A stretch of DNA of 63,751 bases, filler included, from Dugesia japonica (taxonomy: Eukaryota), in assembly GCA_001938525.1 (NCBI GenBank). It is 6 parts of 6 records of this genome, joined end to end, with 100 filler letters (N's around TTAATTAATTAA, not from the genome) between each part and the next. Parts side by side here need not be neighbours in the genome. Positions count along the whole stretch, not along the records: positions 11,435 to 22,206 come from MQRL01505650.1; 5 more parts are not named here. One strand, written 5' to 3'. Below the pieces are notes generated by a model, which worked only from the letters and a program-made list of their open reading frames with translations, searched no databases and had not been told where the DNA came from. Positions 11,391 to 22,206 of this stretch are shown here, in pieces. Positions within the stretch are counted from its first letter, which is position 1. Each line of letters opens with the position of its first letter. The position numbers and the translations under genes are program-made.

Positions 11391-11551
11391 NNNNNNNNNN
11401 NNNNNNNNNNNNNNNNNNNNNNNNNNNNNNNNNNAATCTTCACTGGAAAACTAAATATAATTATTTTTATCTTAACAAGGAAACTGATGAATTGTTAGAT
11501 GATCTTTTCTAATGGGTCCCTCTGGGCATATTATGATGAAACTGACCTATT

Positions 11552-12889
11552 CTAAGCTTCGCGTGCCGTTGGTTGTTGAGCCTTTTCTAAGTTTTGTGTA
11601 TAATTATTAAATTCTTCTAGTGTGATTTTTCCTTCTTCAAGTTCTTTTTCCTTTTCATATATTAAATTCATTTTCCTAGNNNNNNNNNNNNNNNNNNNNN
11701 NNNNNNNNNNNNNNNNNNNNNNNNNNNNNNNNNNNNNNNNNNNNNNNNNNNNNNNNNNNNNNNNNNNNNNNNNNNNNNNNNNNNNNNNNNNNNNNNNNNN
11801 NNNNNNNNNNNNNNNNNNNNNNNNNNNNNNNNNNNNNNNNNNNNNNNNNNNNNNNNNNNNNNNNNNNNNNNNNNNNNNNNNNNNNNNNNNNNNNNNNNNN
11901 NNNNNNNNNNNNNNNNNAATTTGTTTTCCAATATATAAATTAGTTTTCCAAATTTTAATATTTTCATTTATATTTTCCAGATTACTATTATCATTTTTAG
12001 GTAACATTATTTCATTTAAATCTAATGAAACTGGCAAATTATTATTTACAAGTGATTTTGAAAATAAACGAAAAAAATCACTATTAACTTCTAACATTAC
12101 ATCTTTAAAATCATCAGGAACATTATTCATATTAAACAATTCATCATCAGTATTTGTTTCCTCTATGGATCTTGTTTCAATTTCAGATATATCATCTAAA
12201 CTTCCATTTAACTCATCTTTTATTGTTAATGTTTCTTCATCTAGTATTTTATTTATCATTTCACTAGTTAATTTTTCACTTTCTTCTCCTTCTGCCTCGT
12301 GGTTTATTATAGCATCTATACATATTTAATCTAATATTTCCCTTATTATTTCCTCGGTTTTAGTTAGACATATTTCATTCTCTCTTCCTTGATATCTCAT
12401 AATTTCTTCATGAGTTTTTCTATATTCATTTTTTTCAAATAATTCAAAATTTTTTCTACAGATTTTACAAGTTATAATCATAGTCTTTTTATTAAATAAA
12501 TTAATATCATGCTTACACTTTTTATCATTTTTGAAATAATATTTTATATCCCATAAATAAGCCCAATAATTATTTTTTCTTTCATATTTTCTATATTTTC
12601 TTATAAATTTTTTATTATACTTTATTTCCGCTAATTCTTTATTTTTAAATTGAATTAATTTTAATAAACATTCTGTTTTAGTTGGTTTTTCACGAAATTC
12701 TAAATTAAAACCTGGTTCAATAACAATATGTAAAAAATCTCCATTTTCAGGATTTATTGTTACAAATAATTTTTTAATTTTTTTTATTAATTTTTCAATT
12801 TTACTATTATATTTTACAATTTTACAATCACACTCATCTTCACTATAATGAGAACATCCACTATCACTATCACTTTCAGATGTAGACAT
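11552..12889 (-). CDS. Hypothetical Polinton protein(s): 187-aa Lys-rich ORF with CxxC plus 235-aa acidic ORF, in frame across a single TAA at 12326-12328
   Basis: ORFs 12326-12889 and 11552-12259 share a frame (..REILD*ICIDAIINHEAEGEESEKLTSEMINK..). No recognisable family; internal gap. Confidence 0.55.
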
Positions 12890-12961
12890 TTTTATATAAT
12901 AATAATTTAATCATACATAACTGTTCGCATGCGAACAATTTCATATTCCAAGTTTCATGTG

Positions 12962-13573
12962 TCATTGTATTCCAAGTTTCAATTTCATTTCATTAATAAC
13001 TTTATTTTGATTTTCAAGTAACAATTTTATATCTTTACTCTGGCTCGCTTCGCTTGCATGTTTATGATTTGATATCAATTCATGTACATCAGAAACCATT
13101 TTCTTAGAAATACTTAACTCTTCATCTGTTAAAATTTCATCATGAACTGCTTTCTGTTGAAATANNNNNNNTTTATTTTTAACACATTCAAGTTTAGTTA
13201 TTAATTTTGAATATTTTTCTTTTCTAGATTTAACAAATGAAGTGTTCATTGTTCCAATTATTGGTAAAACTGAAATTGCACCTGTAATAACTGGTATTCC
13301 AATTCCAGTAATTGCAATTCCAATTGGAGTTATAAATATAATACCAGCCACTCCAATTCCAGCACTTAATAATATTTGTGTATATTTAATTCCAGTATCA
13401 ATTTTATTCCATCTTTTTTCTAATTTCTTATAATGTTTAATTTTATCTTTAATATAATACAAATCATTTTCAAAATCTTTAATTCTAGTTAAAGCAAGTT
13501 TATTTTTTAAATCATGAATAGTATATTCATTGTCATTACTCAGACTAGGATAAATATTTTCTCCTTCAATCAT
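12962..13573 (-). CDS. Putative membrane protein of Polinton/adintovirus type (two hydrophobic Gly-rich segments, C-terminal coiled coil)
   Basis: N-terminal IYPSL, hydrophobic ILLSAGIGVAGIIFITPIGIAITGIGIPVITGAISVLPIIG, and KAVHDEILTDEEL resembling the 'SKAL.DG.IS.EEF' motif recalled from Polinton accessory proteins. Confidence 0.65.
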   Translation of the reverse strand: MIEGENIYPSLSNDNEYTIHDLKNKLALTRIKDFENDLYYIKDKIKHYKKLEKRWNKIDTGIKYTQILLSAGIGVAGIIFITPIGIAITGIGIPVITGAISVLPIIGTMNTSFVKSRKEKYSKLITKLECVKNKXXXFQQKAVHDEILTDEELSISKKMVSDVHELISNHKHASEASQSKDIKLLLENQNKVINEMKLKLGIQ

Positions 13574-13588
13574 GCTTCGCTATTTTCT

Positions 13589-15819
13589 TTAAGATAAAGT
13601 TAAATATTTTAAATTAATTTCTTCTGGTAAAATTATTTGAATGTAAAATATATTTGTAACATTATTTATTTCAGTGCTTTCTTTAAAAATATTAACAGTT
13701 TTATCAGAATATGAATATGATAATTCTTTAAAATTAATTCCAATGGTGTATGTAAAATTTTCTTTTTCACAATAACCATTAATATTTATTTTTACTTTTG
13801 CATCGATTTTTGTAAATAAAAATATTTCTTTTATAAATTTACCATTTCTTATAAATTTTAAATCTTGAACATATTTCTCTAAAATAGAAAATTCTGGAAT
13901 ATTATCCTTAACTTCCCTAATTGAAAATAGTAAATGTGGATTTGAATAATAATGTAAATAATTATCGAATATTTCTCTTAAAGCTTTAAAATTTGAAGTT
14001 TTAAATAAATCATTAATTTTGTTAATATAAATTTTATGAAGTTTTGGTTTTAAACTTTCAAATTCTTTTTTATATTTACCTAAAGTATCAAACTTAATAA
14101 TTACATTTTTCATTTTAAATTTATTTACAAAAATTATTTCAATGTAATTTATTTTTGTTTCTTTGCTTACATAATNAATTTTAATATTTCCATCTTCAGG
14201 TGTAAGATGATCCATTGACACTGCAATATGATTAATTTTAATTATATAAAGAAATTTGTAAATATCACAGGTACCTTCAATATAAATAATAACTTTTTCA
14301 GTGATATTTGTATGTAAAATAATAGAATTTTTTTTAAAATCAAAACCAGTAACATGATCACTAATGTGAAATTTATCATTCAGTGTTTGATTCGCAGCCA
14401 GCAGTGTTTGATTCGCAGCCAGCAGTGTTAATATTGAATTGTCATTTTCTAAATACACATATTCTTTGTAATTATCAAACATTTCTCTTAAAGCTTTGAA
14501 ATTAAATGTTTTAAAATAAACATTAATTCTGTCAACATGTAACCTATGAAACTTTTTATTTTTATATTCTTCTTTTAACTTTTCAAACATTTCTAATTTA
14601 TATAAATTAACACTTATATCTTTTATATAAATATTTTCAGGTAAAATTATTACAATATATTTTATATTTGTATCACTAGTAATTTCAGTATTTTCTCTAT
14701 AAATATTAATATTTCCGGATTCAGGTTTTACATATAAAAATGACACTGCAAGATGATTAATTCTAATGACATATGTAAATTTTTCAATTTCACATTTACC
14801 AATAATACTTATACTAATTTTTTTATTTAATTTTGTGTGTAAATGAATTTCAAAAGGTTTTACAAGCTGAAAATATGTAAGGTCTAATGAAAAGAAATAA
14901 TTTTTTTTTCCTTTTTTAAAATAAAAATCGGTAACATATTTATTCATAATATTAAATTTTCCAAATATATCTTTAACAATAATTGAAAATATCTTATAAG
15001 TATTAGGTGTGTCATTATAATAAACGTGATTATCAAGTAATTCTTTTAAATTATTTAATGTTGAACTTGAAAGTGTTTCTTTATATTTTTTAAATAAAAG
15101 ATTAACTTTATCAGTATATATTTCATGTGAATATATACTCAATATTTCTTCAGTTAATTTTAAAATTATAGGTTTTATTTTTTCTATAAAGATTTTAAGA
15201 TTGTTCACAGAAATAATATAAATATCATATGTTTTCTTGTCTATATCATCATGTAATTTGTTAATTTTTCTTTTTAATATATCAATTTCTTTTTTAATTT
15301 TCAATGAATCAAGAGTATCTAATTTTTCTAAATTAATAATTAAATCACTTCTTTTAAATGGAAATAGTTCTTGTTTTAATCTTTTAATTTCAGTGTTGAT
15401 ATTATCAAATGTTTCTTGGTTACAGTTCTTTGTAATTTTTGAATTTTATTATTAAAACCTGAAATATCAACATTCAATGTTTTTAATTCATTAATTTTAG
15501 ATTCTAAATATAATTTGTTAGCTGTGAAACTGTCAACTTTTAATAATCTATTGAAAATTATTTCATGTTTTTGTAATTTTTCTTCAAGAGACTTTATGTA
15601 TTTTAAATTACTTTCTTCTGATTGTTTTATGTATTTTAAATTAACTGCATCTTGTAAATCTTTAGGGTCATCTGTTATTTTTAGAGAAGTAATTGTGTCA
15701 CCTGTTTCATTTACATATTTATTTTCATTTGTTGCATCTAAGGTTCTAATTTTTGCATTTACATTTTTTAATATTTCTGTTGAATTTACGGTATTAGCAG
15801 TAGCACCAAACTTATTCAT
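13589..15819 (-). pseudogene. Fibre/spike-like protein with three tandem C-terminal modules; apparently one gene frameshifted near 15420
   Basis: N-part MNKFG..YVNETGDTI..PKDLQDAVNLKYI resembles tail-fibre 'GDTM.G' and 'DAATK.YV' motifs. The frame of ORF 13589-15304 is open upstream to ~15445, overlapping ORF 15376-15819. Confidence 0.55.
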
Positions 15820-15845
15820 TTTTTACCTTTATGGATTCGCGTAGC

Positions 15846-16292
15846 TCAGTTCTTTTCTAATATTGAATTATAAAGATCTAACATTTCAGATATTATCATG
15901 TCAAATTTTACATATTGAATTTTTCTTCCTTTATGGATCTTATATAAAAAATAAATACATAAAATGCCACATATTTCAGTGTTAAAATGTTGNNNNNNNN
16001 NNNNNNNNNNNNNNNNNNNNNNNNNNNNNNNNNNNNNNNNNNNNNNNNNNNNNNNNNNNNNNNNNNNNNNNNNNNNNNNNNNNNNNNNNNNNNNNNNNNN
16101 NNNNNNNNNNNNNNNNNNNNNNNNNNNNNNNNNNNNNNNNNNNNNNNNNNNNNNNNNNNNNNNNNNNNNNNNNNNNNNNNNNNNNNNNNNNNNNNTTGAA
16201 TATAAATCAAAATTTGTTGTTGTGTTAATTCCAAATGTTTTTAAAAAATCAATCAATGAATAATCTTGTCCACTATGTTGTGGTTCGTCCAT
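15846..16292 (-). CDS. Adenain-like (adenoviral/Polinton) cysteine maturation protease; centre lost in gap
   Basis: QHFNTEICGILCIYFL matches the Q-x5/6-CG-x2-C-x2-FL catalytic Cys block; N-terminal TTNFDL; adjacent to penton. Confidence 0.82.
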   Translation of the reverse strand: MDEPQHSGQDYSLIDFLKTFGINTTTNFDLYSXXXXXXXXXXXXXXXXXXXXXXXXXXXXXXXXXXXXXXXXXXXXXXXXXXXXXXXXXXXXXXXXXXXXQHFNTEICGILCIYFLYKIHKGRKIQYVKFDMIISEMLDLYNSILEKN

Positions 16293-16309
16293 TTTAATAA
16301 GAAAAGGTT

Positions 16310-16987
16310 TTAAAGTCGATACTTTCTTAAATGTACTAAAATTGTAATTGTTTCATTGTTAAAATCTATTGTGTTAAAATTTTCATCTACNNNNNNNNNN
16401 NNNNNNNNNNNNNNNNNNNNNNNNNNNNNNNNNNNNNNNNNNNNNNNNGATGGTCTTTCTACTATTTTATATCCAAATGGAACTGTGTTTATTGGAAATG
16501 AATATAAAAGATTAATATTTTTTGTTTCTGTGTTATTTGTTACATAGTTACCTTTAACAATGTTACATGTAATATTTATCGCGTTACTATTTATAATGTT
16601 AATTTAAGTATCTGAATAATAATTACCAGGTTCATATTTTCCAGGTTTAAATCCTAGAATTATATGGAAAAATGATTTATTATCAAATGTTAATATGTTT
16701 TTCTGGATCTTCATATTACATTTAGATGTTGCTGTGTCAGGTGTAATTTCTAGATATTTTTCTAAACGATTTGACATTTCTTTTACTTCATATGATCCTG
16801 GTTCTAAACTCATTTGTTTGTTATTGTCTATAATGTATTTATTATTTAAATTGTTAATGTTAAATATAATATTGTAACATGAAAAATATAACATGCCAAG
16901 TTCATATTCTGAATCTAATTTTATAGGATAATCTAAATTTACTTTTAAATCTTGTTCTGTTCCAACTACTAAGAATTTATGAGACAT
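16310..16987 (-). pseudogene. Minor capsid protein (penton, single jelly-roll) with in-frame TAA at 16604-16606
   Basis: YPIKLDSEYELGM..YNIIFNI..GSYEV..ILGF..YSDT*INIINSNAINITCNIVKGNY..VPFGYKIVERP[gap]VDENFNTIDFNNETITILVHLRK. Typical Polinton penton motifs continue past the stop. Confidence 0.85.
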
Positions 16988-16996
16988 TTATTATAT

Positions 16997-17950
16997 TTAA
17001 TTTTTGAAATATTTAGACTTATATTTTTTATAAATAATATCAGATAATAATCCTTGAGATTTTAAATTTTTACACACGGATTTAATTTCTGCATGTAAAT
17101 TGTTATGTCCAGATTTTACAGCTGAAATTAATAATGTTAACTTTTCAAATNATGCAATTGGATTTTTGTTTATTTTCATTCCATCAGCTTTTACTTCTTT
17201 TTTTAAAATTTGTTTAGCATCTTCTATTTCTTGTTGTTTTCTTTTAGCTTTTTCAATATCATCCTGTTCAATTCTACTTTTATTTTTTTGAATTAATGAT
17301 TTTAAATAACCACAATAATTATTTTTCACAGGTATTTTTATTATTTCTGTTAAATATTTATTCACAAAGTTTTTTATAGTAGTGTTATTATAGTAATCAA
17401 CTGCTTCACTTAGATTTCCCATCATTACATCAACAAATTCATTTTGATATTCATCTTCATAAATTTTATTATTTATTGATAAATGTTTTACATCTTTAAT
17501 TGTAAAGAAAAATACTGACGCATCTTTTGATTTAAAATATAATCTTGTATATTTTTTATCTGGTGTTACAGGTATTTCATCAATTTGAGGAACTATTGTT
17601 GGTGATAGATTATCAGTATTAAGTGTTAAATTATCAGGTTTAAATGGAAATACATCTTCAGTCATAAAAAACGTGTTAGTAATTACATCTTTATTGAATA
17701 AATCAATTATGGGTTCTGACTTTATGGGTTCTTTTATGACTTCTTTTATTGGTTCTAATGTGAGTTTTTCTTCCTTGTTACCCTTGTGGTTTTTCATGGT
17801 TTTTTCAATTGCAGAGATTGTTGGTTGTTGTAAAGTTGATAAGTTAGTTTGTAAAGTGTTATAATCATCAACTTGACCAGAATAATAATTATTATATTTT
17901 TCTTGTGCATCAATTAGTGCTTTTAATTCTTTAATTCGTTTTTCTATCAT
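16997..17950 (-). CDS. Conserved uncharacterised Polinton protein (putative structural/core)
   Basis: C-terminal KLTLLISAVKSGHNNLHAEIKSVCKNLKSQGLL resembles the Polinton 'RL.LL.A...AGN.....EI..I...L...G.I' motif; intact 317-aa ORF. Confidence 0.65.
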   Translation of the reverse strand: MIEKRIKELKALIDAQEKYNNYYSGQVDDYNTLQTNLSTLQQPTISAIEKTMKNHKGNKEEKLTLEPIKEVIKEPIKSEPIIDLFNKDVITNTFFMTEDVFPFKPDNLTLNTDNLSPTIVPQIDEIPVTPDKKYTRLYFKSKDASVFFFTIKDVKHLSINNKIYEDEYQNEFVDVMMGNLSEAVDYYNNTTIKNFVNKYLTEIIKIPVKNNYCGYLKSLIQKNKSRIEQDDIEKAKRKQQEIEDAKQILKKEVKADGMKINKNPIAXFEKLTLLISAVKSGHNNLHAEIKSVCKNLKSQGLLSDIIYKKYKSKYFKN

Positions 17951-17971
17951 TTCGCGTGGCTCTTTTATATA

Positions 17972-18520
17972 TTAATAATTTTCATCTTCGGTTTCAGTTT
18001 CAATACCTTTTCCTTTATTTTCTCCTTGGTGGGCTACGCTATATGGATTTAAATATATACCATGACCATGTTGAATTATATGAGTTCCATGTTTAAATTT
18101 TTTTGTTATATGTTTCATGTTAGGATCAATATTTTTTAAATATTTATGTATTGCTGTGCCTTGATATGGATTTAAATATATTCCTTGGCCTGTTGTTGGT
18201 TTTTGTTTGTTGTCGTCCTTTAAGATTTTTTGTTTTTGTAATTCAATTAATTCACCTTCTTTTTGTTTATTTACAGCTTCTCTAGAATTTGCAACTGTTT
18301 TTGCAATTCCAGCTGCAACTCCACCAGCAGATGCTAATGCAGTAACTATTGCTGGGATGGCAGCTAGAAATGCAAATCCACCTTCTTTACTACGAGCTTT
18401 TAATTCATCTTTAATTTTTTTAGAAATATAATAATTTTTACCATTTATTTTTACAGATTTACATTTTTTAGAATTTACAATTTTAATTAATTCTTCTTCT
18501 GTTATATTGCTGTCTGACAT
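17972..18520 (-). CDS. pX/mu-like core protein precursor
   Basis: KEGG|FAFLAAIPAIVTALASAGGVAAGIA resembles adenoviral pX 'GGFLP.LIP.IAAA'; duplicated G.GIYLNPY motif. Confidence 0.7.
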   Translation of the reverse strand: MSDSNITEEELIKIVNSKKCKSVKINGKNYYISKKIKDELKARSKEGGFAFLAAIPAIVTALASAGGVAAGIAKTVANSREAVNKQKEGELIELQKQKILKDDNKQKPTTGQGIYLNPYQGTAIHKYLKNIDPNMKHITKKFKHGTHIIQHGHGIYLNPYSVAHQGENKGKGIETETEDENY

Positions 18521-18528
18521 TATTTCTT

Positions 18529-21500
18529 TTATAGATCTTTATTAATATTATTATTTAAGCATGTTAATGTTCGATTTATTAAATCTAATCTTAAATGCCA
18601 TTGTGAGCATTTTTCACAGAAATATTGATTTCCATATGGCCATGTTCTAGTTGCATCATCTTCTATTATTATTTTATCATCAAATGCCATTAATGCTATT
18701 TTCTTTTGTTTTATTAATTCAATTTCATGACAATCAGATTTTAATGTATAATTTATTCCATAAAATACTTTACTTTTATCTTTTAATACTTCATCAAAAT
18801 CTGACATTAATAATTTATTATTTTTCTTGACACCTTTATTTCTTGAATCATAACTTTGTCCTTTATTTTCAGTGTAAGAATAACTATAAGATTTTGCTTT
18901 TATAAAATTACCTTGAATTATTTCATTGTTAGGTTTTTCATCTTTCATCTGAAATAAATTATCACCAAGTAGGCTTTCTAATTTTATTAAGTTATCTCTA
19001 TGTTTTATTTCAACAAAGATACAATCAGTATTTTTTATTATCAATGGAAATCCACAATTAAATGAGCCATCTTCAGTTTCAATGTCATATACATCTTCTA
19101 GATTTTCTCTTAAAAATCTTACACTTTGAAGATTAGTTTCAATTTCAGTTAAAGTTTCTTTTAATTTGAAGTCTTCTGTAATAATTAAATTCATTCCTAA
19201 AGATGTTCCTAGATAATATGCTTTAGATAAAGATATTTTATCAGTGATTGTTTTATTTAAAATGTCACATGTAATTTGTTTATTTAAAGATATTATTGTT
19301 TTAAATTTATTGTGTAATAATTTAGTTTCATATGTTAAATCTGTTGGTTTTATTTGTTCATTGTTTTCATTTAACAGTGAATGGTCTTCTGTTACATCTA
19401 CAATTCCCATATGAGTTGTTACACGATAAATCTTTTTATTTGTTTTATGTTTAATTACTTTTTTCAATGGAACCCAGTTACTTTTAGTCCAAATTTCATA
19501 ATTTTCTGGATAAGAATAATATTTCCCGTCATAATCATTTTTTGTATAAGATTGATCGATTTCTGAAATCTTTTTAATTTCAACTTTATTATTTTTTCTT
19601 AGAATCACTGGAGTGTCTTTTGTTACACTGTCACTGTAATGAATTTTATAGTTATCATTTCCAATTAAAGGTTGCATTTGATTGTAAATAAAATCATACA
19701 TTACTTCTTTTGCGTGTTCGAGGATTGTGAATCCTATATATGGAAATTTATTATAATTTAATTTACTTTTTATCATATTAATTGCGGCAACATGAGCTTC
19801 ATTTGTATCATTTAAACAGAAGATTTTAGATGATTTAAAAGTTGGTTTTCTTATAAACTTTCGATAATCTTTGTCATTGTCAACAATTTCAATGTTACAT
19901 CGATTTCTGATATTTTCTAGTGTTTTGCCATAGAAAGCATTTAACATTAATTTATAAATATAATCTCCAAAGACATCTTTAATTTTTTTAGATTCTTTTC
20001 TTAGGGATATTAATTTGTGAACATGATCTTTAAACCATGGAGATGTTTTCATTTCAATCATTTTATGTATTTTTACTAAAGACATGCCATGTTTTAAATA
20101 TAGATCTAATGTTGAACCTAGAACAGTATAATTCTTTTTATCGAATTGATTTAATGTTAGTTTAATATTATCATTTGATATTTTCTTATTAAATGATTTT
20201 TGATAATTACTTAACATGCCTTCTGTAATAAGGATTCTTTCTGGTGCTAATGGGAAATATTTTGTTTTTTCATGGATCTCTTTTGGATAATCAAGGTCGA
20301 CTTCATATATAAAATTCATTTTATTTGTGGCTGGTTCATAAGTTAGCTCGTTGGATTCTTTGAATTCACCTGTTGGAAGTGGTCTTGTCATGCATGATGC
20401 ATATAATGAATTTTCGTCTATATATTTTATAAATGTTTCTTCTTTCCAATCTACTGGTGGAGTTTTATTTTTTATTAATGAATATAATATCTCGCCAACT
20501 TGTGTTTTATTTAATTGTCTTGATATTCCAAATCTAGGATTTGAGATTTTATTATTTGAAAATACTTGACGTTCACCTAGAACACCAGAATAGCCACCAC
20601 GTATTCCAGATTCAATTAATAAGAAAATATCATAGGTTTCAGGTTTAGCATATTTTAAGTAAATATTTGCATTTAACATTCCAGTTTCCCATGAATATCC
20701 TGGTGCAGAATATGAATAACATGGATCTAGTTTTAGGATATTATTTAAACATGAAACTCTAAAGTTTTCAAGGAAATCTGTTAAAATTAATACATCAAGT
20801 TTCATGTAATGTAACATGTAATCCCAGAGATTTTTATAATCTAAAAAATCTATTAAAAAATTATCATATTCTTGATCAGATATTTCTTTTTGTGTTAGTG
20901 TATTAAAGAAATCTTTTCTAGTTGGTGTTCGTTTTGATTTTAATAATTTCATGACTTCTGTGACATTTTTACCTTTTACACATTCATATGGAAACACGAT
21001 TTTTTTAGGTTTTAAATTGTGGGATTTTAATATTGGATAATTATTAGATTGTGTTAATAAATTACCCATTACTTCTACGGATGTAAATGGAAGTAATCTA
21101 GCTGAATCTAAGAATCTAATATCTTCATATTGAAATGAAATATAATTTTCTGAACTGTGGGGTATTATTTTTTTAATTTTTCGTGTAAATTTTGTTATTA
21201 ATTCTTTGAAAAATAAATGATTATCATAGCCGGATGCGTTATGAAAATAAAATGGGATGAATAGATTCTTGATACTTCTATCATTAATATTACAAGTGTT
21301 ACATGAATATCCACGAGGTTCACCTGTGAAATGATTATGATCTAAAACTGGTTCTTTCAGGATCGGTTTTTCACAATAATAACAATTTTCATTTTTAAAA
21401 TCGCTATGCTGGCCTGTAGATGTTTTTATTAATTTATTTTCTTTTATATCTTGTAATTTATTATTAATGTCATCTAAAAATTCAAAGAATTCAAGATAAA

Positions 21501-22206
21501 TATTTTCACCTGTGAATTGATAATATTTTGATTCTAGGAGATGTTGGTGTTCACTGTGAAGATAAACACCTAAAGATATAGCTTTTTGTTTTTTAGTGTT
21601 AATATTTGTGTAAGCTTCAAAATCACCTATTAATATGAAAGGTATTTTATTTTTCATGTAAAATTTATTAAATGAATAATAACTTTTAAATGGAAATACA
21701 ATATTGTTTGGTTTGTGTCTAATACATGCATCTTGATGTTTAATTAATATTTCTTCAGATGAATAAGAATTCATACATCTTATGCATGGAAAAATTTTAT
21801 TTCCATTTTTTGAAAAGAATACAGATAGATCTCGACATAGAATATAATGATTTTTATATATCAAGAGATTACATTTATTTTCTTCTGGATTTGGTTTTAT
21901 TGTATGATGTGAAATGTAAAGTGGTTCAAGTTTTTTAGAATCATTAACACCGAAAACATTTATATTATAATCATTTAATTTCTCAAATTTGGGAATATCA
22001 GTTATTTTCATTGGAAATTCAAAATCTGATTTTAATTCTGATAAATGTGGAATGTAATTATTTACACGTGTTGGATGATCAAGTAGATGTTTATGTGCTA
22101 AGATTGAATATAAGAAGCATTTGTCATTTGTGTTTTCTATGTTGATTACACCTGGTTTTGAAAATGGTAATTTAATAAATGTTGCTCCATTTTTTGAATC
22201 ATATTT
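18529..22206 (-). CDS. polB: Protein-primed family B DNA polymerase (pPolB) with vOTU-like, Zn-finger, endonuclease-VII-like and intein domains; 5' end lost in gap
   Basis: Frame open for 65 more codons upstream of 22011 to the gap. ExoI IGDFEAY, ExoII FHNASGYD, ExoIII YMKLDV, motif A YIDENSLYASCM, motif B KLMLNAFYGK, motif C YSD|TDC split by the intein. Confidence 0.95.
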   Translation of the reverse strand, partial: KYDSKNGATFIKLPFSKPGVINIENTNDKCFLYSILAHKHLLDHPTRVNNYIPHLSELKSDFEFPMKITDIPKFEKLNDYNINVFGVNDSKKLEPLYISHHTIKPNPEENKCNLLIYKNHYILCRDLSVFFSKNGNKIFPCIRCMNSYSSEEILIKHQDACIRHKPNNIVFPFKSYYSFNKFYMKNKIPFILIGDFEAYTNINTKKQKAISLGVYLHSEHQHLLESKYYQFTGENIYLEFFEFLDDINNKLQDIKENKLIKTSTGQHSDFKNENCYYCEKPILKEPVLDHNHFTGEPRGYSCNTCNINDRSIKNLFIPFYFHNASGYDNHLFFKELITKFTRKIKKIIPHSSENYISFQYEDIRFLDSARLLPFTSVEVMGNLLTQSNNYPILKSHNLKPKKIVFPYECVKGKNVTEVMKLLKSKRTPTRKDFFNTLTQKEISDQEYDNFLIDFLDYKNLWDYMLHYMKLDVLILTDFLENFRVSCLNNILKLDPCYSYSAPGYSWETGMLNANIYLKYAKPETYDIFLLIESGIRGGYSGVLGERQVFSNNKISNPRFGISRQLNKTQVGEILYSLIKNKTPPVDWKEETFIKYIDENSLYASCMTRPLPTGEFKESNELTYEPATNKMNFIYEVDLDYPKEIHEKTKYFPLAPERILITEGMLSNYQKSFNKKISNDNIKLTLNQFDKKNYTVLGSTLDLYLKHGMSLVKIHKMIEMKTSPWFKDHVHKLISLRKESKKIKDVFGDYIYKLMLNAFYGKTLENIRNRCNIEIVDNDKDYRKFIRKPTFKSSKIFCLNDTNEAHVAAINMIKSKLNYNKFPYIGFTILEHAKEVMYDFIYNQMQPLIGNDNYKIHYSDSVTKDTPVILRKNNKVEIKKISEIDQSYTKNDYDGKYYSYPENYEIWTKSNWVPLKKVIKHKTNKKIYRVTTHMGIVDVTEDHSLLNENNEQIKPTDLTYETKLLHNKFKTIISLNKQITCDILNKTITDKISLSKAYYLGTSLGMNLIITEDFKLKETLTEIETNLQSVRFLRENLEDVYDIETEDGSFNCGFPLIIKNTDCIFVEIKHRDNLIKLESLLGDNLFQMKDEKPNNEIIQGNFIKAKSYSYSYTENKGQSYDSRNKGVKKNNKLLMSDFDEVLKDKSKVFYGINYTLKSDCHEIELIKQKKIALMAFDDKIIIEDDATRTWPYGNQYFCEKCSQWHLRLDLINRTLTCLNNNINKDL
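19030..19629 (-). mobile_element. Mini-intein (200 aa) in pPolB motif C (Pol-c site)
   Basis: Block A SVTKDTPVILR, block B VDVTEDHSLL (TxxH), block F VYDIETEDGSF, block G LIIKN followed by Thr+1. Excision restores YSDTDCIF. Confidence 0.93.

What the first reader, a model, noticed from the sequence alone, without database searches (positions are those of the whole stretch)
19030..19629. Apparently splicing-competent mini-intein splitting the active site of a protein-primed Polinton DNA polymerase in an animal-like assembly
Seen: pPolB motif C reads YSD-[SVTKDTPV...VDVTEDHSLL...VYDIETEDGSFNCGFPLIIKN]-TDCIF. The in-frame insert is exactly 600 nt (aa 795-994 of the listed ORF), with Ser1, block B TxxH, block F Asp, terminal Asn and Thr+1. 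Established: the D|T position in YGDTDS is the Pol-c intein site of archaeal and giant-virus RNA-primed PolBs, and true inteins are not known from animal nuclear genes. I know of no report in Polinton pPolBs, but could not check the literature. Inference: the polymerase can only work after protein splicing, so this Polinton lineage carries an obligatory splicing element. If integrated, it has put a true intein into an animal genome.
Basis: partly seen in the sequence, partly recalled or inferred. Interest (0 to 1): 0.95.

Follow-up and report, generated by a model that had tools for sequence, protein, structure and literature searches.

The report
Mini-intein in a Polinton-type DNA polymerase
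A 200-residue self-splicing protein element (a mini-intein related to those in giant-virus DNA polymerases) sits exactly inside the catalytic motif of the protein-primed DNA polymerase of a virus-like transposon, which I found no paper describing, but nothing in this piece shows that the host is an animal.

Summary
Window 19030-19629 (minus strand) encodes an in-frame 200-residue insert between the two catalytic aspartates of motif C (YSD|TDC) of a protein-primed family B polymerase (pPolB). Seven intein-less relatives have no residues at that point. Four others carry 337-354 residues there, with a LAGLIDADG nuclease.

The insert folds confidently as a HINT domain (pLDDT 91). It keeps Ser1, TxxH, the block F Asp, the terminal Asn and Thr+1. 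It aligns end to end (42% identity, E 6e-40) with mini-inteins at YGD|TDS in Pol-delta-like polymerases of giant viruses. It is therefore a true pol-c-type intein that has crossed into the pPolB branch and lost its homing nuclease.

Relatives of this pPolB lie in Polintons (integrase, A32 ATPase, double jelly-roll capsid gene) on contigs of up to 8.4 Mb. In one assembly, copies 98.5-99.9% identical differ only by a precise 1017-nt intein.

No paper in the searchable library reports HINT inteins in Polinton pPolBs, but public sequence data hold at least seven such protein clusters.

The animal-host and integration claims cannot be tested. The piece contains only element-like genes, has 20% GC, and cuts the polymerase gene at its edge. 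Splicing is inferred, not shown.

The parts
18529..22206 (-). Protein-primed family B DNA polymerase (pPolB) gene. It is intact up to its stop codon but is cut at its 5' end by the edge of the piece.
   Evidence: ORF 18529..22011. The frame stays open to 22206 and matches the N-terminal region of relatives. Pfam DNA_pol_B_2 scores E 2.5e-17, above the curated cut-off. The columns that are invariant among relatives for the Exo, motif A, B, C and KxY regions are all kept.
19630..22206 (-). N-extein, ending in ...HYSD (first motif C aspartate, D794 of the listed ORF).
   Evidence: It is 30-40% identical over 97-100% of its length to more than 100 pPolBs.
19030..19629 (-). Mini-intein of 200 residues (Ser1 ... 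Lys199-Asn200).
   Evidence: Clean indel. AF2 pLDDT 91.4 and pTM 0.88. The top 50 Foldseek PDB hits are all intein, intein-like or Hedgehog autoprocessing (HINT) structures. The top BFVD hits are PolBs of giant viruses. It is 42% identical end to end to the P0017 mini-intein.
19309..19629 (-). Intein residues 1-107: the N-terminal splicing lobe, with block A (Ser1) and block B (T80-x-x-H83).
   Evidence: Invariant columns S1, T6, P7, W47, W52, H61, D78, E81, D82 and H83 in 24 sequences. Counts over 87 inteins are. phmmer finds the N. equitans NEQ068 intein half at E 0.0012.
19252..19308 (-). Intein residues 108-126: the linker at the position where full-length relatives carry the LAGLIDADG nuclease core.
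   Evidence: These are the only window intein residues outside the columns shared by at least 80% of 87 inteins. This is the lowest-confidence stretch of the model, with block pLDDT 63. The window has no LAGLIDADG Pfam hit, whereas P0001, P0003 and P0012 do.
19030..19251 (-). Intein residues 127-200: a helix-strand remnant shared with full-length relatives, followed by the C-terminal splicing lobe with block F (D182) and block G (K199-N200).
18529..19029 (-). C-extein, beginning with Thr+1-Asp-Cys (second motif C aspartate, D996) and running to the stop codon.
   Evidence: T995 and D996 are invariant in A1. 'SDTDC' also occurs contiguously in 5 intein-less relatives.
21286..21405 (-). Endonuclease VII / HNH-type zinc-binding domain inside the pPolB (aa 203-242). 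It is a feature of the whole pPolB family and is not part of the intein.
   Evidence: Pfam PF02945 scores E 1.6e-06, above the cut-off. The same domain is found in most relatives.
15846..16292 (-). 148-codon ORF whose middle is masked with N. It is a possible adenain-type maturation protease of the element.
   Evidence: The evidence is weak and indirect. Its C-terminal part hits small genes of three Polinton loci by tblastn (E 0.002-0.23), and those genes have sub-threshold Peptidase_C5 hits (E 0.006-0.04).

Best explanation
Window 19030-19629 encodes a canonical class 1 mini-intein. It lies between the two metal-binding aspartates of motif C of the pPolB of a Polinton/Maverick-type virus-like element. 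The intein belongs by descent to the family that occupies the same position (YGD|TDS, the 'pol-c' site) in Pol-delta-like polymerases of giant viruses. It entered the pPolB branch by cross-family invasion of the conserved DTD-coding site. It spread among Polinton pPolBs as a full-length intein of 337-354 residues with a LAGLIDADG nuclease. In the window's lineage it then lost the nuclease core. The expected mechanism (inferred) has four steps. Ser1 makes an N-O acyl shift, helped by T80/H83. Thr+1 attacks the resulting ester. Asn200 cyclises and releases the intein. An O-N shift then restores YSD-TDC and brings the two catalytic aspartates together. The unspliced precursor should be inactive, so splicing is obligatory for the element's replication enzyme. 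Without a nuclease, the intein is now inherited passively with its host gene.
For: Shown by tools. (1) The insert is a precise 200-residue indel against 7 aligned relatives, and it is absent from 118 further extein homologues and from 29 IMG/VR pPolB loci. (2) The model is a confident HINT fold (pLDDT 91.4, pTM 0.88). All 50 best PDB matches are intein, intein-like or Hedgehog autoprocessing (HINT) structures, the best at E 8.6e-8. (3) The catalytic positions agree with the family. Over 87 inteins the counts are S1 87, T80 86, H83 87, D182 87, N200 87 and penultimate Lys 80, so the Lys that replaces the usual His is the family norm. (4) Homology: 42% identity end to end with the P0017 mini-intein (E 6e-40). 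About 76 Pol-delta-like PolBs carry relatives at YGD|S...KN|TDS, and one is named Mimiviridae sp. ChoanoV1. BFVD hits include Megavirus, Klosneuvirus and Heterosigma akashiwo virus 01 PolBs at TM 0.73-0.86. (5) Seven clusters of pPolBs carry the intein at the same site with a LAGLIDADG domain. In a neighbour-joining (NJ) tree all pPolB inteins form one clade nested among the giant-virus inteins. (6) The polymerase looks functional: the frame is open over at least 1225 codons at GC3 of about 0.1-0.15, and all family-invariant residues are present. (7) Related Polinton copies in one assembly differ by a precise 1017-nt intein within flanks 98.5-99.9% identical. This shows the lineage has been gained or lost precisely and recently. 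From the literature: the D|T site is the pol-c site (position III) of Mimivirus and archaeal PolBs and of the N. equitans split (PMC549080).
Against: Splicing itself is not shown, and there are no expression or protein data. The Pfam Intein_splicing model scores only 14.6 bits against a cut-off of 35.8; relatives also fall below that cut-off. The penultimate residue is Lys, not His. Bootstrap support for one pPolB-intein clade is weak (95 of 200), and for the window plus P0012 it is moderate (130 of 200), so the number and direction of transfers are not settled. The 5' end of the gene is missing, so I cannot certify that the whole polymerase is intact. No integrase, capsid or ATPase gene and no element end lies in the piece, so 'Polinton' rests on the genomic context of relatives.
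Confidence: 0.8

Rival explanations
1. The insert is a true intein by descent but no longer splices. On this reading it is a relic in a dead, non-replicating copy of the element, and the polymerase is never made in active form.
For: The homing nuclease has been lost. Only one copy is visible. In relatives several intein-bearing pPolBs are called as two genes, meaning each is broken at least once (L001, L007). There are no expression data. The intein's composition is fully assimilated to the gene, which points to long residence.
Against: Every catalytic position that is invariant in 87 relatives is retained. The frame is open for at least 1225 codons in DNA where about one random codon in ten would be a stop. 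All family-invariant polymerase residues are present. Neighbouring ORFs are also open and tightly packed.
Confidence: 0.15
2. The piece does not come from an animal chromosome. It belongs to a protist or fungal genome, or to a free or episomal virus-like element (possibly one associated with a giant virus) that was sequenced together with the nominal organism. On this reading no intein has entered an animal genome.
For: GC is 16-30% across the piece, about 20% on average. The piece has no host gene, intron, tRNA or Rfam match. All ORFs are compact and lie on one strand. The intein's relatives are in giant-virus polymerases. The exact protein and all close relatives are absent from the public collections; the best extein match is 40% identical and comes from an environmental assembly. 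The accessory ORFs are orphans.
Against: Related pPolBs are multi-copy on contigs of 0.1-8.4 Mb, next to retroelement and mariner-type transposase genes. Integration in eukaryotic chromosomes is therefore normal for this family. Polintons and HNH-bearing pPolBs are documented in animals (PMC10748475).
Confidence: 0.5
3. The insert is not an intein. It would instead be a permanently retained accessory domain, like the HNH or VSR nuclease insertions described in other Polinton pPolBs.
For: Insertions of nuclease domains in Polinton pPolBs are known (PMC10748475). The Pfam intein model is below its threshold.
Against: The HINT fold is confident and finds only HINT matches. All the intein nucleophiles are present. 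The insert lies between the two catalytic aspartates, where a permanent 200-residue domain would split the active site. It has no nuclease motif.
Confidence: 0.02

Closest known systems
PolB inteins of giant viruses at YGD|TDS (Mimivirus R322 intein, PMC549080; Heterosigma akashiwo virus 01, Megavirus and Klosneuvirus PolBs found)
   Same: The insertion point is the same, between the D and the T of motif C. Both are Ser1 / terminal Asn / Thr+1 'asparagine-type' inteins with a HINT fold. The sequences are clearly homologous: 40-50% identity to metagenomic members and 22-35% in the structural alignments with the named viruses. Mini forms of 192-271 residues also occur in that family (27 of 76).
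   Different: The host protein here is a protein-primed PolB (Pfam DNA_pol_B_2), not a Pol-delta-like RNA-primed PolB (DNA_pol_B plus exo1). The host element is a Polinton-type element, not a giant virus. The Mimivirus intein has 351 residues with a LAGLIDADG nuclease, whereas the window's has 200 and none.
Archaeal pol-c inteins and the Nanoarchaeum equitans split PolB intein (NEQ068/NEQ528)
   Same: The same allelic site, position III (PMC549080). NEQ068 is the only significant sequence match in the PDB (E 0.0012), and the NeqN/NeqC complex is also a structural match.
   Different: These are archaeal and thermophilic, and the N. equitans intein is split into two genes. The similarity is much lower than to the giant-virus inteins.
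Intein-bearing pPolBs in public sequence data (P0001, P0002, P0003, P0004/P0007, the P0009 cluster, P0012)
   Same: The same site (SD|S...N|TDS), the same intein family (46-61% identity in the N-terminal lobe) and the same pPolB family. The loci carry rve integrase, A32 ATPase and a double jelly-roll capsid gene.
   Different: All ten are full length (337-354 residues) with a LAGLIDADG domain. The window's is the only mini form seen in a pPolB. None of them has a name, and I found no publication about them.
HNH and VSR nuclease insertions in Polinton pPolB2 (Jeong et al. 2023, PMC10748475; read as possible intein invasions in PMC11161782)
   Same: A domain derived from a mobile element is inserted into a Polinton polymerase. 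The window's pPolB also carries an Endonuclease VII/HNH-type domain.
   Different: Those insertions are nuclease domains retained in the mature protein. They sit at other positions and have no HINT splicing domain. The paper does not use the word intein.
Nuclear inteins of fungi and algae (PRP8, VMA1 and others; PMC5784728)
   Same: They are inteins encoded in eukaryotic nuclear DNA.
   Different: Those sit in cellular housekeeping genes and belong to unrelated intein families. That survey states that inteins are absent from metazoan genomes and lists no transposon-borne intein.

Membership tests
Intein (HINT superfamily, class 1) | In-frame insertion that is absent from orthologues, with the host motif contiguous in them | tested here: met
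   200 residues against 0 in 7 relatives; 116 of 118 contiguous; 29 IMG/VR loci without it.
Intein (HINT superfamily, class 1) | HINT fold | tested here: met
   AF2 pLDDT 91.4. Foldseek PDB: 28 hits at E<=0.001 and all 50 best hits are intein, intein-like or Hedgehog HINT structures. BFVD hits reach TM 0.86.
Intein (HINT superfamily, class 1) | Block A N-terminal Ser/Cys; block B TxxH; block F Asp; block G terminal Asn; +1 Ser/Thr/Cys | tested here: met
   S1, T80/H83, D182, N200 and T995.
Intein (HINT superfamily, class 1) | Penultimate His in block G | tested here: not met
   The residue is Lys199. Lys holds this position in 80 of 87 family members, His in 5 and Ser in 2. From general knowledge, some inteins splice without this His.
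Intein (HINT superfamily, class 1) | Pfam Intein_splicing (PF14890) at or above its gathering score | tested here: not met
   14.6 bits against a cut-off of 35.8. Relatives that clearly carry inteins also score below it, at 21.9-30.2 bits.
Intein (HINT superfamily, class 1) | Autocatalytic protein splicing | not testable with these tools
   Inferred from residues, fold and homology only.
pol-c (position III) allelic intein family of family B polymerases | Insertion between the D and the T of motif C (YGD|TDS) | tested here: met
   YSD|TDC in the window. The site is defined in PMC549080.
pol-c (position III) allelic intein family of family B polymerases | Closer in sequence to inteins at that site than to other inteins | tested here: met
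   (about 76 PolBs with YGD|S...KN|TDS). NEQ068 is the only PDB sequence hit. One member of the family sits in a topoisomerase II, so the family is not strictly tied to this site.
pol-c (position III) allelic intein family of family B polymerases | Host is an RNA-primed (Pol-delta-like or archaeal) PolB | tested here: not met
   The host is DNA_pol_B_2, a pPolB. The giant-virus hosts are DNA_pol_B plus exo1, and the A2 profile hits Pol delta at E 7e-199.
LAGLIDADG homing endonuclease-containing (full-length) intein | LAGLIDADG domain between the splicing lobes | tested here: not met
   The window has no LAGLIDADG hit. The region is reduced to residues 108-126 plus a short helix-strand remnant. 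The domain is present in P0001, P0003 and P0012.
Polinton / Maverick | Protein-primed PolB | tested here: met
   The pPolB family's members lie in Polinton loci.
Polinton / Maverick | rve-type integrase, A32/FtsK packaging ATPase, double jelly-roll major capsid protein and penton protein in the same element | tested here: inconclusive
   None was found among the 9 other ORFs of the piece (Pfam, PHROGs, tblastn). The piece is only 10.8 kb and is cut at both ends. In relatives these genes lie 5-13 kb from the polymerase.
Polinton / Maverick | Adenain-type cysteine protease | tested here: inconclusive
   ORF 15846-16292 is half masked. It has weak indirect links to sub-threshold Peptidase_C5 genes of three Polintons.
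Polinton / Maverick | Terminal inverted repeats and target-site duplication; integration in a host chromosome | not testable with these tools
   No element end lies in the piece. Inverted repeats are only short, chance-like AT-rich matches.
Animal nuclear gene / animal host | Physical linkage to animal sequence | not testable with these tools
   There is no host sequence in the piece and the exact protein is not on record.

The most novel reading that the evidence does not exclude
Polinton pPolB inteins are a living intein lineage that homes among transposon copies inside eukaryotic nuclear genomes. The lineage was seeded by transfer from a giant-virus polymerase at the shared DTD-coding site. 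If the window's piece is truly part of an animal chromosome, it would be the first true intein found in metazoan nuclear DNA and the first in a eukaryotic transposon's replicase.
Probability: 0.2. Interest if true: 0.85.

Novelty: new variant of a known kind. Interest (0 to 1): 0.62.

Why it matters
Inteins are known in RNA-primed family B polymerases of archaea and giant viruses. They are thought to be absent from animals (PMC5784728). Here the same intein family sits at the same catalytic site in the other great branch of family B polymerases, the protein-primed enzymes, inside a Polinton-type element.

This gives a three-level nesting of selfish elements: an intein in a virus-like transposon in a eukaryotic genome. 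It also gives a concrete case of an intein crossing between polymerases that share little beyond the motif it targets. That links giant viruses and Polintons, which meet in the same cells.

The near-identical intein-plus and intein-minus Polinton copies in one assembly suggest this lineage has moved recently within a nuclear genome. For annotation, pPolBs that look 'too long' or 'split' at motif C should be checked for inteins before they are called broken.

If an animal host were shown, the statement that metazoan genomes lack inteins would need revising.

Tried and rejected
1. Exact look-up of the window's pPolB found nothing on record.

2. A single-protein pattern scan of IMG/VR gave no relatives. 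The alignment-based scan gave 29 pPolB loci, none with the intein.

3. tblastn of the nine other window ORFs against six relatives' loci gave only marginal hits. Pfam and PHROGs gave nothing usable. The word-based search for the 127-aa ORF found nothing. The exhaustive HMMER search for the 571-aa ORF found zero hits in 1.84 billion representatives.

4. AF2 of one repeat unit of the 571-aa ORF, aligned with its two sister units, gave pLDDT 56. That is too poor for a fold search, so none was run.

5. The Mimivirus-type early promoter octamer is not enriched (2 found, 6.3 expected). The sigma-70 promoter and terminator scans are at chance level. No tRNA or Rfam family was found. No terminal inverted repeat was found.

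6. Sequence searches of the N-extein and of the pPolB alignment against the PDB found no solved pPolB, only zinc-finger noise. The pPolB assignment therefore rests on Pfam.

7. The PDB search with alignment A2 was dominated by the full-length polymerases in that alignment. It is useful only for showing that those hosts are Pol-delta-like.

8. Kapitonov & Jurka 2006 could not be opened by PMC id or by DOI.

9. I rejected the reading that the intein is a recent arrival. Its GC and GC3 match the exteins.

10. I rejected the idea that the penultimate Lys marks decay. It is the family norm.
Full report
**What is in the piece.** The usable piece is 11435-22206. It is very AT-rich, with 12-30% GC per 500 nt and about 20% overall. 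All sizeable ORFs lie on the minus strand and are closely packed.

The largest ORF is 18529..22011 (1160 aa). It matches Pfam DNA_pol_B_2, the protein-primed 'organellar and viral' family B polymerases, at E 2.5e-17, above the curated cut-off. It also has an Endonuclease VII/HNH-type domain at aa 203-242.

The frame stays open for 65 more codons upstream of the listed Met, up to the edge of the piece. That stretch matches the conserved N-terminal region of relatives.

**The observation.** Residues 795-994 map exactly to 19030-19629. The context reads HYSD | S-V-T-K-D-T ... I-I-K-N | T-D-C-I-F.

- In MAFFT alignment A1, seven intein-less relatives (P0133, P0005, P0006, P0008, P0010, P0011, P0078) have no residue between the columns of D794 and T995. 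They show a contiguous [TS]DTDS.
- The window has exactly 200 residues there.
- P0001, P0002, P0003 and P0012 have 337-354 residues there.

A second search restricted to the N-extein gave 118 further pPolBs at 30-40% identity. None has the insert, and 116 have a contiguous motif C. The two closest (P0141 and P0142, 40% and 38% identical) read NYK[LI]HFSD|TDS[VI]FLEL against the window's NYKIHYSD|TDCIFVEI. 'SDTDC' occurs contiguously in five relatives, so the Cys is not unusual. Twenty-nine pPolB loci from IMG/VR also lack the insert.

**Is it an intein?** The sequence models are weak on this family:
- Pfam Intein_splicing scores only 14.6 bits against a cut-off of 35.8.
- Clear relatives also score below that cut-off.
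- phmmer against the PDB finds one family only: NEQ068, the N-terminal half of the Nanoarchaeum equitans split PolB intein (E 0.0012).

Homology and structure are decisive:
- The 200 residues align end to end with a 218-residue insert of P0017, a Pol-delta-like PolB, at 42% identity and E 6e-40.
- With an alignment of 23 such proteins (A2), AlphaFold2 gives pLDDT 91.4 and pTM 0.88.
- Foldseek against the PDB returns intein, intein-like or Hedgehog autoprocessing (HINT) structures for all 50 best matches. These include the TFIIB and RadA mini-inteins, the cysteine-less Aes123 PolB1 intein and NeqN/NeqC.
- Against BFVD, the best matches are PolBs of giant viruses (Pithovirus LCPAC302, Megavirus courdo11, Marseillevirus LCMAC201, Heterosigma akashiwo virus 01, Klosneuvirus KNV1) at TM 0.73-0.86.

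**Catalytic residues.** I cut 87 non-identical inteins out of the hits and counted residues at the window's positions:

| Position | Count over 87 inteins |
|---|---|
| S1 | 87 |
| T80 | 86 |
| H83 | 87 |
| D182 | 87 |
| G193 | 87 |
| N200 | 87 |
| Penultimate residue | Lys 80, His 5, Ser 2 |

S1 and N200 were partly enforced by my filter, which dropped three sequences with misplaced ends. The +1 residue is Thr in all of them. The window's Lys199 is therefore the family norm, not a defect. All nucleophiles of a class 1 intein are present.

**Family and history.** About 76 of the inteins sit at YGD|S...KN|TDS in proteins with DNA_pol_B plus exo1 domains. One of these is named Mimiviridae sp. 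ChoanoV1 and others 'viral metagenome'. One lies on a JGI contig (L009) and another on a giant-virus MAG (L036). The A2 profile hits Pol delta at E 7e-199.

This is the site that Ogata et al. described for Mimivirus ('YGD|TDS'). It is position III, the pol-c allele, shared with archaeal PolBs and with the N. equitans split (PMC549080).

In this family both full-length forms (318-413 residues, with LAGLIDADG) and mini forms (192-271 residues) occur, 49 and 27 respectively. Ten pPolB inteins in seven 90% clusters are all full length, at 337-354 residues. The window's is the only mini form found in a pPolB.

The nuclease core of full-length members lies where the window has residues 108-126. That is the only stretch outside the shared columns, and it is the least confident part of the model. 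Residues 127-165 are a helix-strand remnant shared with the full-length forms.

In a neighbour-joining (NJ) tree on 181 shared columns, all pPolB inteins form one clade nested among the giant-virus inteins, and the window is sister to P0012 (58% identity). Bootstrap support is only 95 of 200 for the clade and 130 of 200 for the sister pair. A single transfer from giant-virus PolB to pPolB is therefore the simplest reading, not a demonstrated one.

The same family also occurs in a type II topoisomerase (P0120, 50% identity in the N-terminal lobe), so it has changed host genes before. The window's intein has the same base composition as its exteins: GC 0.237 and GC3 0.12, against 0.253/0.152 and 0.224/0.102. 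It is not a recent arrival in this lineage.

**What kind of element.** Relatives of this pPolB lie in Polintons:
- L003 has an rve-chromo integrase, an A32 ATPase and an intein-bearing pPolB.
- L001, on a 760-kb contig, has a double jelly-roll capsid gene, rve, and an intein-bearing pPolB called as two genes.
- L004, on an 8.45-Mb contig, has A32, rve-chromo, Bro-N and the pPolB.
- L002 has a double jelly-roll gene and an AAA ATPase.

Most of the 118 relatives are multi-copy on contigs of 0.1-8.4 Mb.

In the window itself I found none of the other hallmark genes. The nine other ORFs have no Pfam or PHROGs family. One has no word-based homologue. The 571-aa ORF has no homologue at all in 1.84 billion representatives. 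There are two weak hints. ORF 15846-16292, half of which is masked, resembles small genes of three Polintons that have sub-threshold adenovirus-protease hits. ORF 17972-18520 weakly resembles a gene next to the capsid gene in L002. 'Polinton' is thus well supported for the polymerase family and only by inference for this piece.

**Mobility in relatives.** In assembly ERZ25070786 the same Polinton family occurs without the intein (P0133, L002) and with a 339-residue intein (P0130 in L008, P0135 in L007). The exteins are 98-99% identical. At the DNA level, L002 and L008 are 98.5% identical over 3281 nt upstream and 99.9% over 2153 nt downstream, and they differ by a precise 1017-nt insertion. 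The 36 nt around the site differ at one synonymous base. The neighbours are reverse-transcriptase, mariner-type transposase, RING and ankyrin genes, which indicates a repeat-rich eukaryotic genome. This shows recent precise gain (homing) or precise loss of the intein among nuclear Polinton copies. In L001 and L007 the intein-bearing polymerase is called as two genes, so each is broken at least once.

**Mechanism (inferred).** Ser1 undergoes an N-O acyl shift, assisted by T80/H83. Thr+1 attacks the ester. Asn200 cyclises and frees the intein. The peptide bond then reforms to give YSD-TDC. The two aspartates of this motif are invariant in the family (D794 and D996). By established knowledge of family B polymerases, they bind the catalytic metals. 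They are 200 residues apart in the precursor, so activity should require splicing. Without a nuclease, the intein can no longer home and persists because imprecise loss would destroy the active site.

**Host claim.** Nothing in the piece is host sequence, no element end is present, and the exact protein is not on record. The low GC and the giant-virus affinity of the intein fit a protist- or virus-associated element at least as well as an animal chromosome. On the other side, integration in large eukaryotic contigs is normal for the family, and Polintons with HNH-bearing pPolBs occur in animals (PMC10748475). I cannot tell.

**Literature.** Full-text searches combined intein with polinton, protein-primed, maverick, pPolB, adintovirus and the title of Kapitonov & Jurka. 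They found no report of a HINT intein in a Polinton pPolB.

The nearest statements are two. HNH and VSR nuclease insertions occur in Polinton pPolB2 (PMC10748475). A remark in another paper says that such insertions may 'result from intein invasions' (PMC11161782). A survey of eukaryotic inteins states that inteins are absent from metazoan genomes and lists viral DNA polymerases as common hosts (PMC5784728). Kapitonov & Jurka 2006 is not held. I have a vague, unverifiable memory that it may mention inteins, so I cannot exclude priority.

**Verdict.** This is a real intein of a known family at a known site, in a new branch of host proteins and a new kind of host element. It is the first mini form seen there. 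Splicing competence is likely (about 0.7). Membership in the intein family is near certain. The animal claim is open.

None was entered into a tool, a note or this report, and no conclusion rests on them. The protease suggestion rests only.

Noticed in passing
L002, L007 and L008 (ENA assembly ERZ25070786): Copies of one related Polinton family are 98.5-99.9% identical in DNA and differ by a precise 1017-nt (339-codon) intein with LAGLIDADG at SD|TD. The flank downstream of the site is more similar (99.9%) than the upstream flank (98.5%). That could be a co-conversion tract or chance.
   Followed up: partly
P0120 (1595 aa, topoisomerase II domains, on a 319-kb contig): The same intein family (50% identity over the N-terminal splicing lobe, E 5e-33) sits in a type II topoisomerase. 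The family is therefore not confined to polymerase motif C.
   Followed up: partly
window 13589-15304 (minus strand): This 571-aa ORF is built of three tandem units of about 170 aa (39-47% identical in protein; DNA repeats spaced 501-525 nt). It has no homologue in 1.84 billion representative proteins. AF2 of one unit gave only pLDDT 56, with a helical N-terminal part and a beta-rich C-terminal part.
   Followed up: yes
window 14381-14422: A perfect 21-nt tandem duplication lies inside the 571-aa ORF and repeats seven residues in frame.
   Followed up: no
window 21286-21405 (pPolB aa 203-242) and about aa 69-107: The polymerase carries an Endonuclease VII/HNH-type domain between the exonuclease motifs, and a C2H2-like zinc finger near the N-terminus. 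Most relatives share the HNH domain. This recalls the HNH-bearing pPolB2 class described in nematode and oomycete Polintons (PMC10748475).
   Followed up: partly
window 22012-22206: The polymerase reading frame continues open to the edge of the piece and matches the conserved N-terminal region of relatives. The true start of the gene lies outside the piece.
   Followed up: yes
window 15846-16292 and 17972-18520: There are weak, indirect hints of an adenain-type protease (its ORF is half masked by N) and of a small membrane or core protein. The latter's counterpart in L002 has a sub-threshold Adeno_PX hit and sits next to the capsid gene. ORF 17972-18520 also has a 27-nt internal repeat at 18041 and 18164.
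   Followed up: partly
window 11680-11950, about 15996-16196, about 16389-16450, and single positions in three ORFs: Runs of N and single N interrupt several ORFs (11552-12259, 15846-16292, 12962-13573, 13589-15304, 16997-17950).
   Followed up: no
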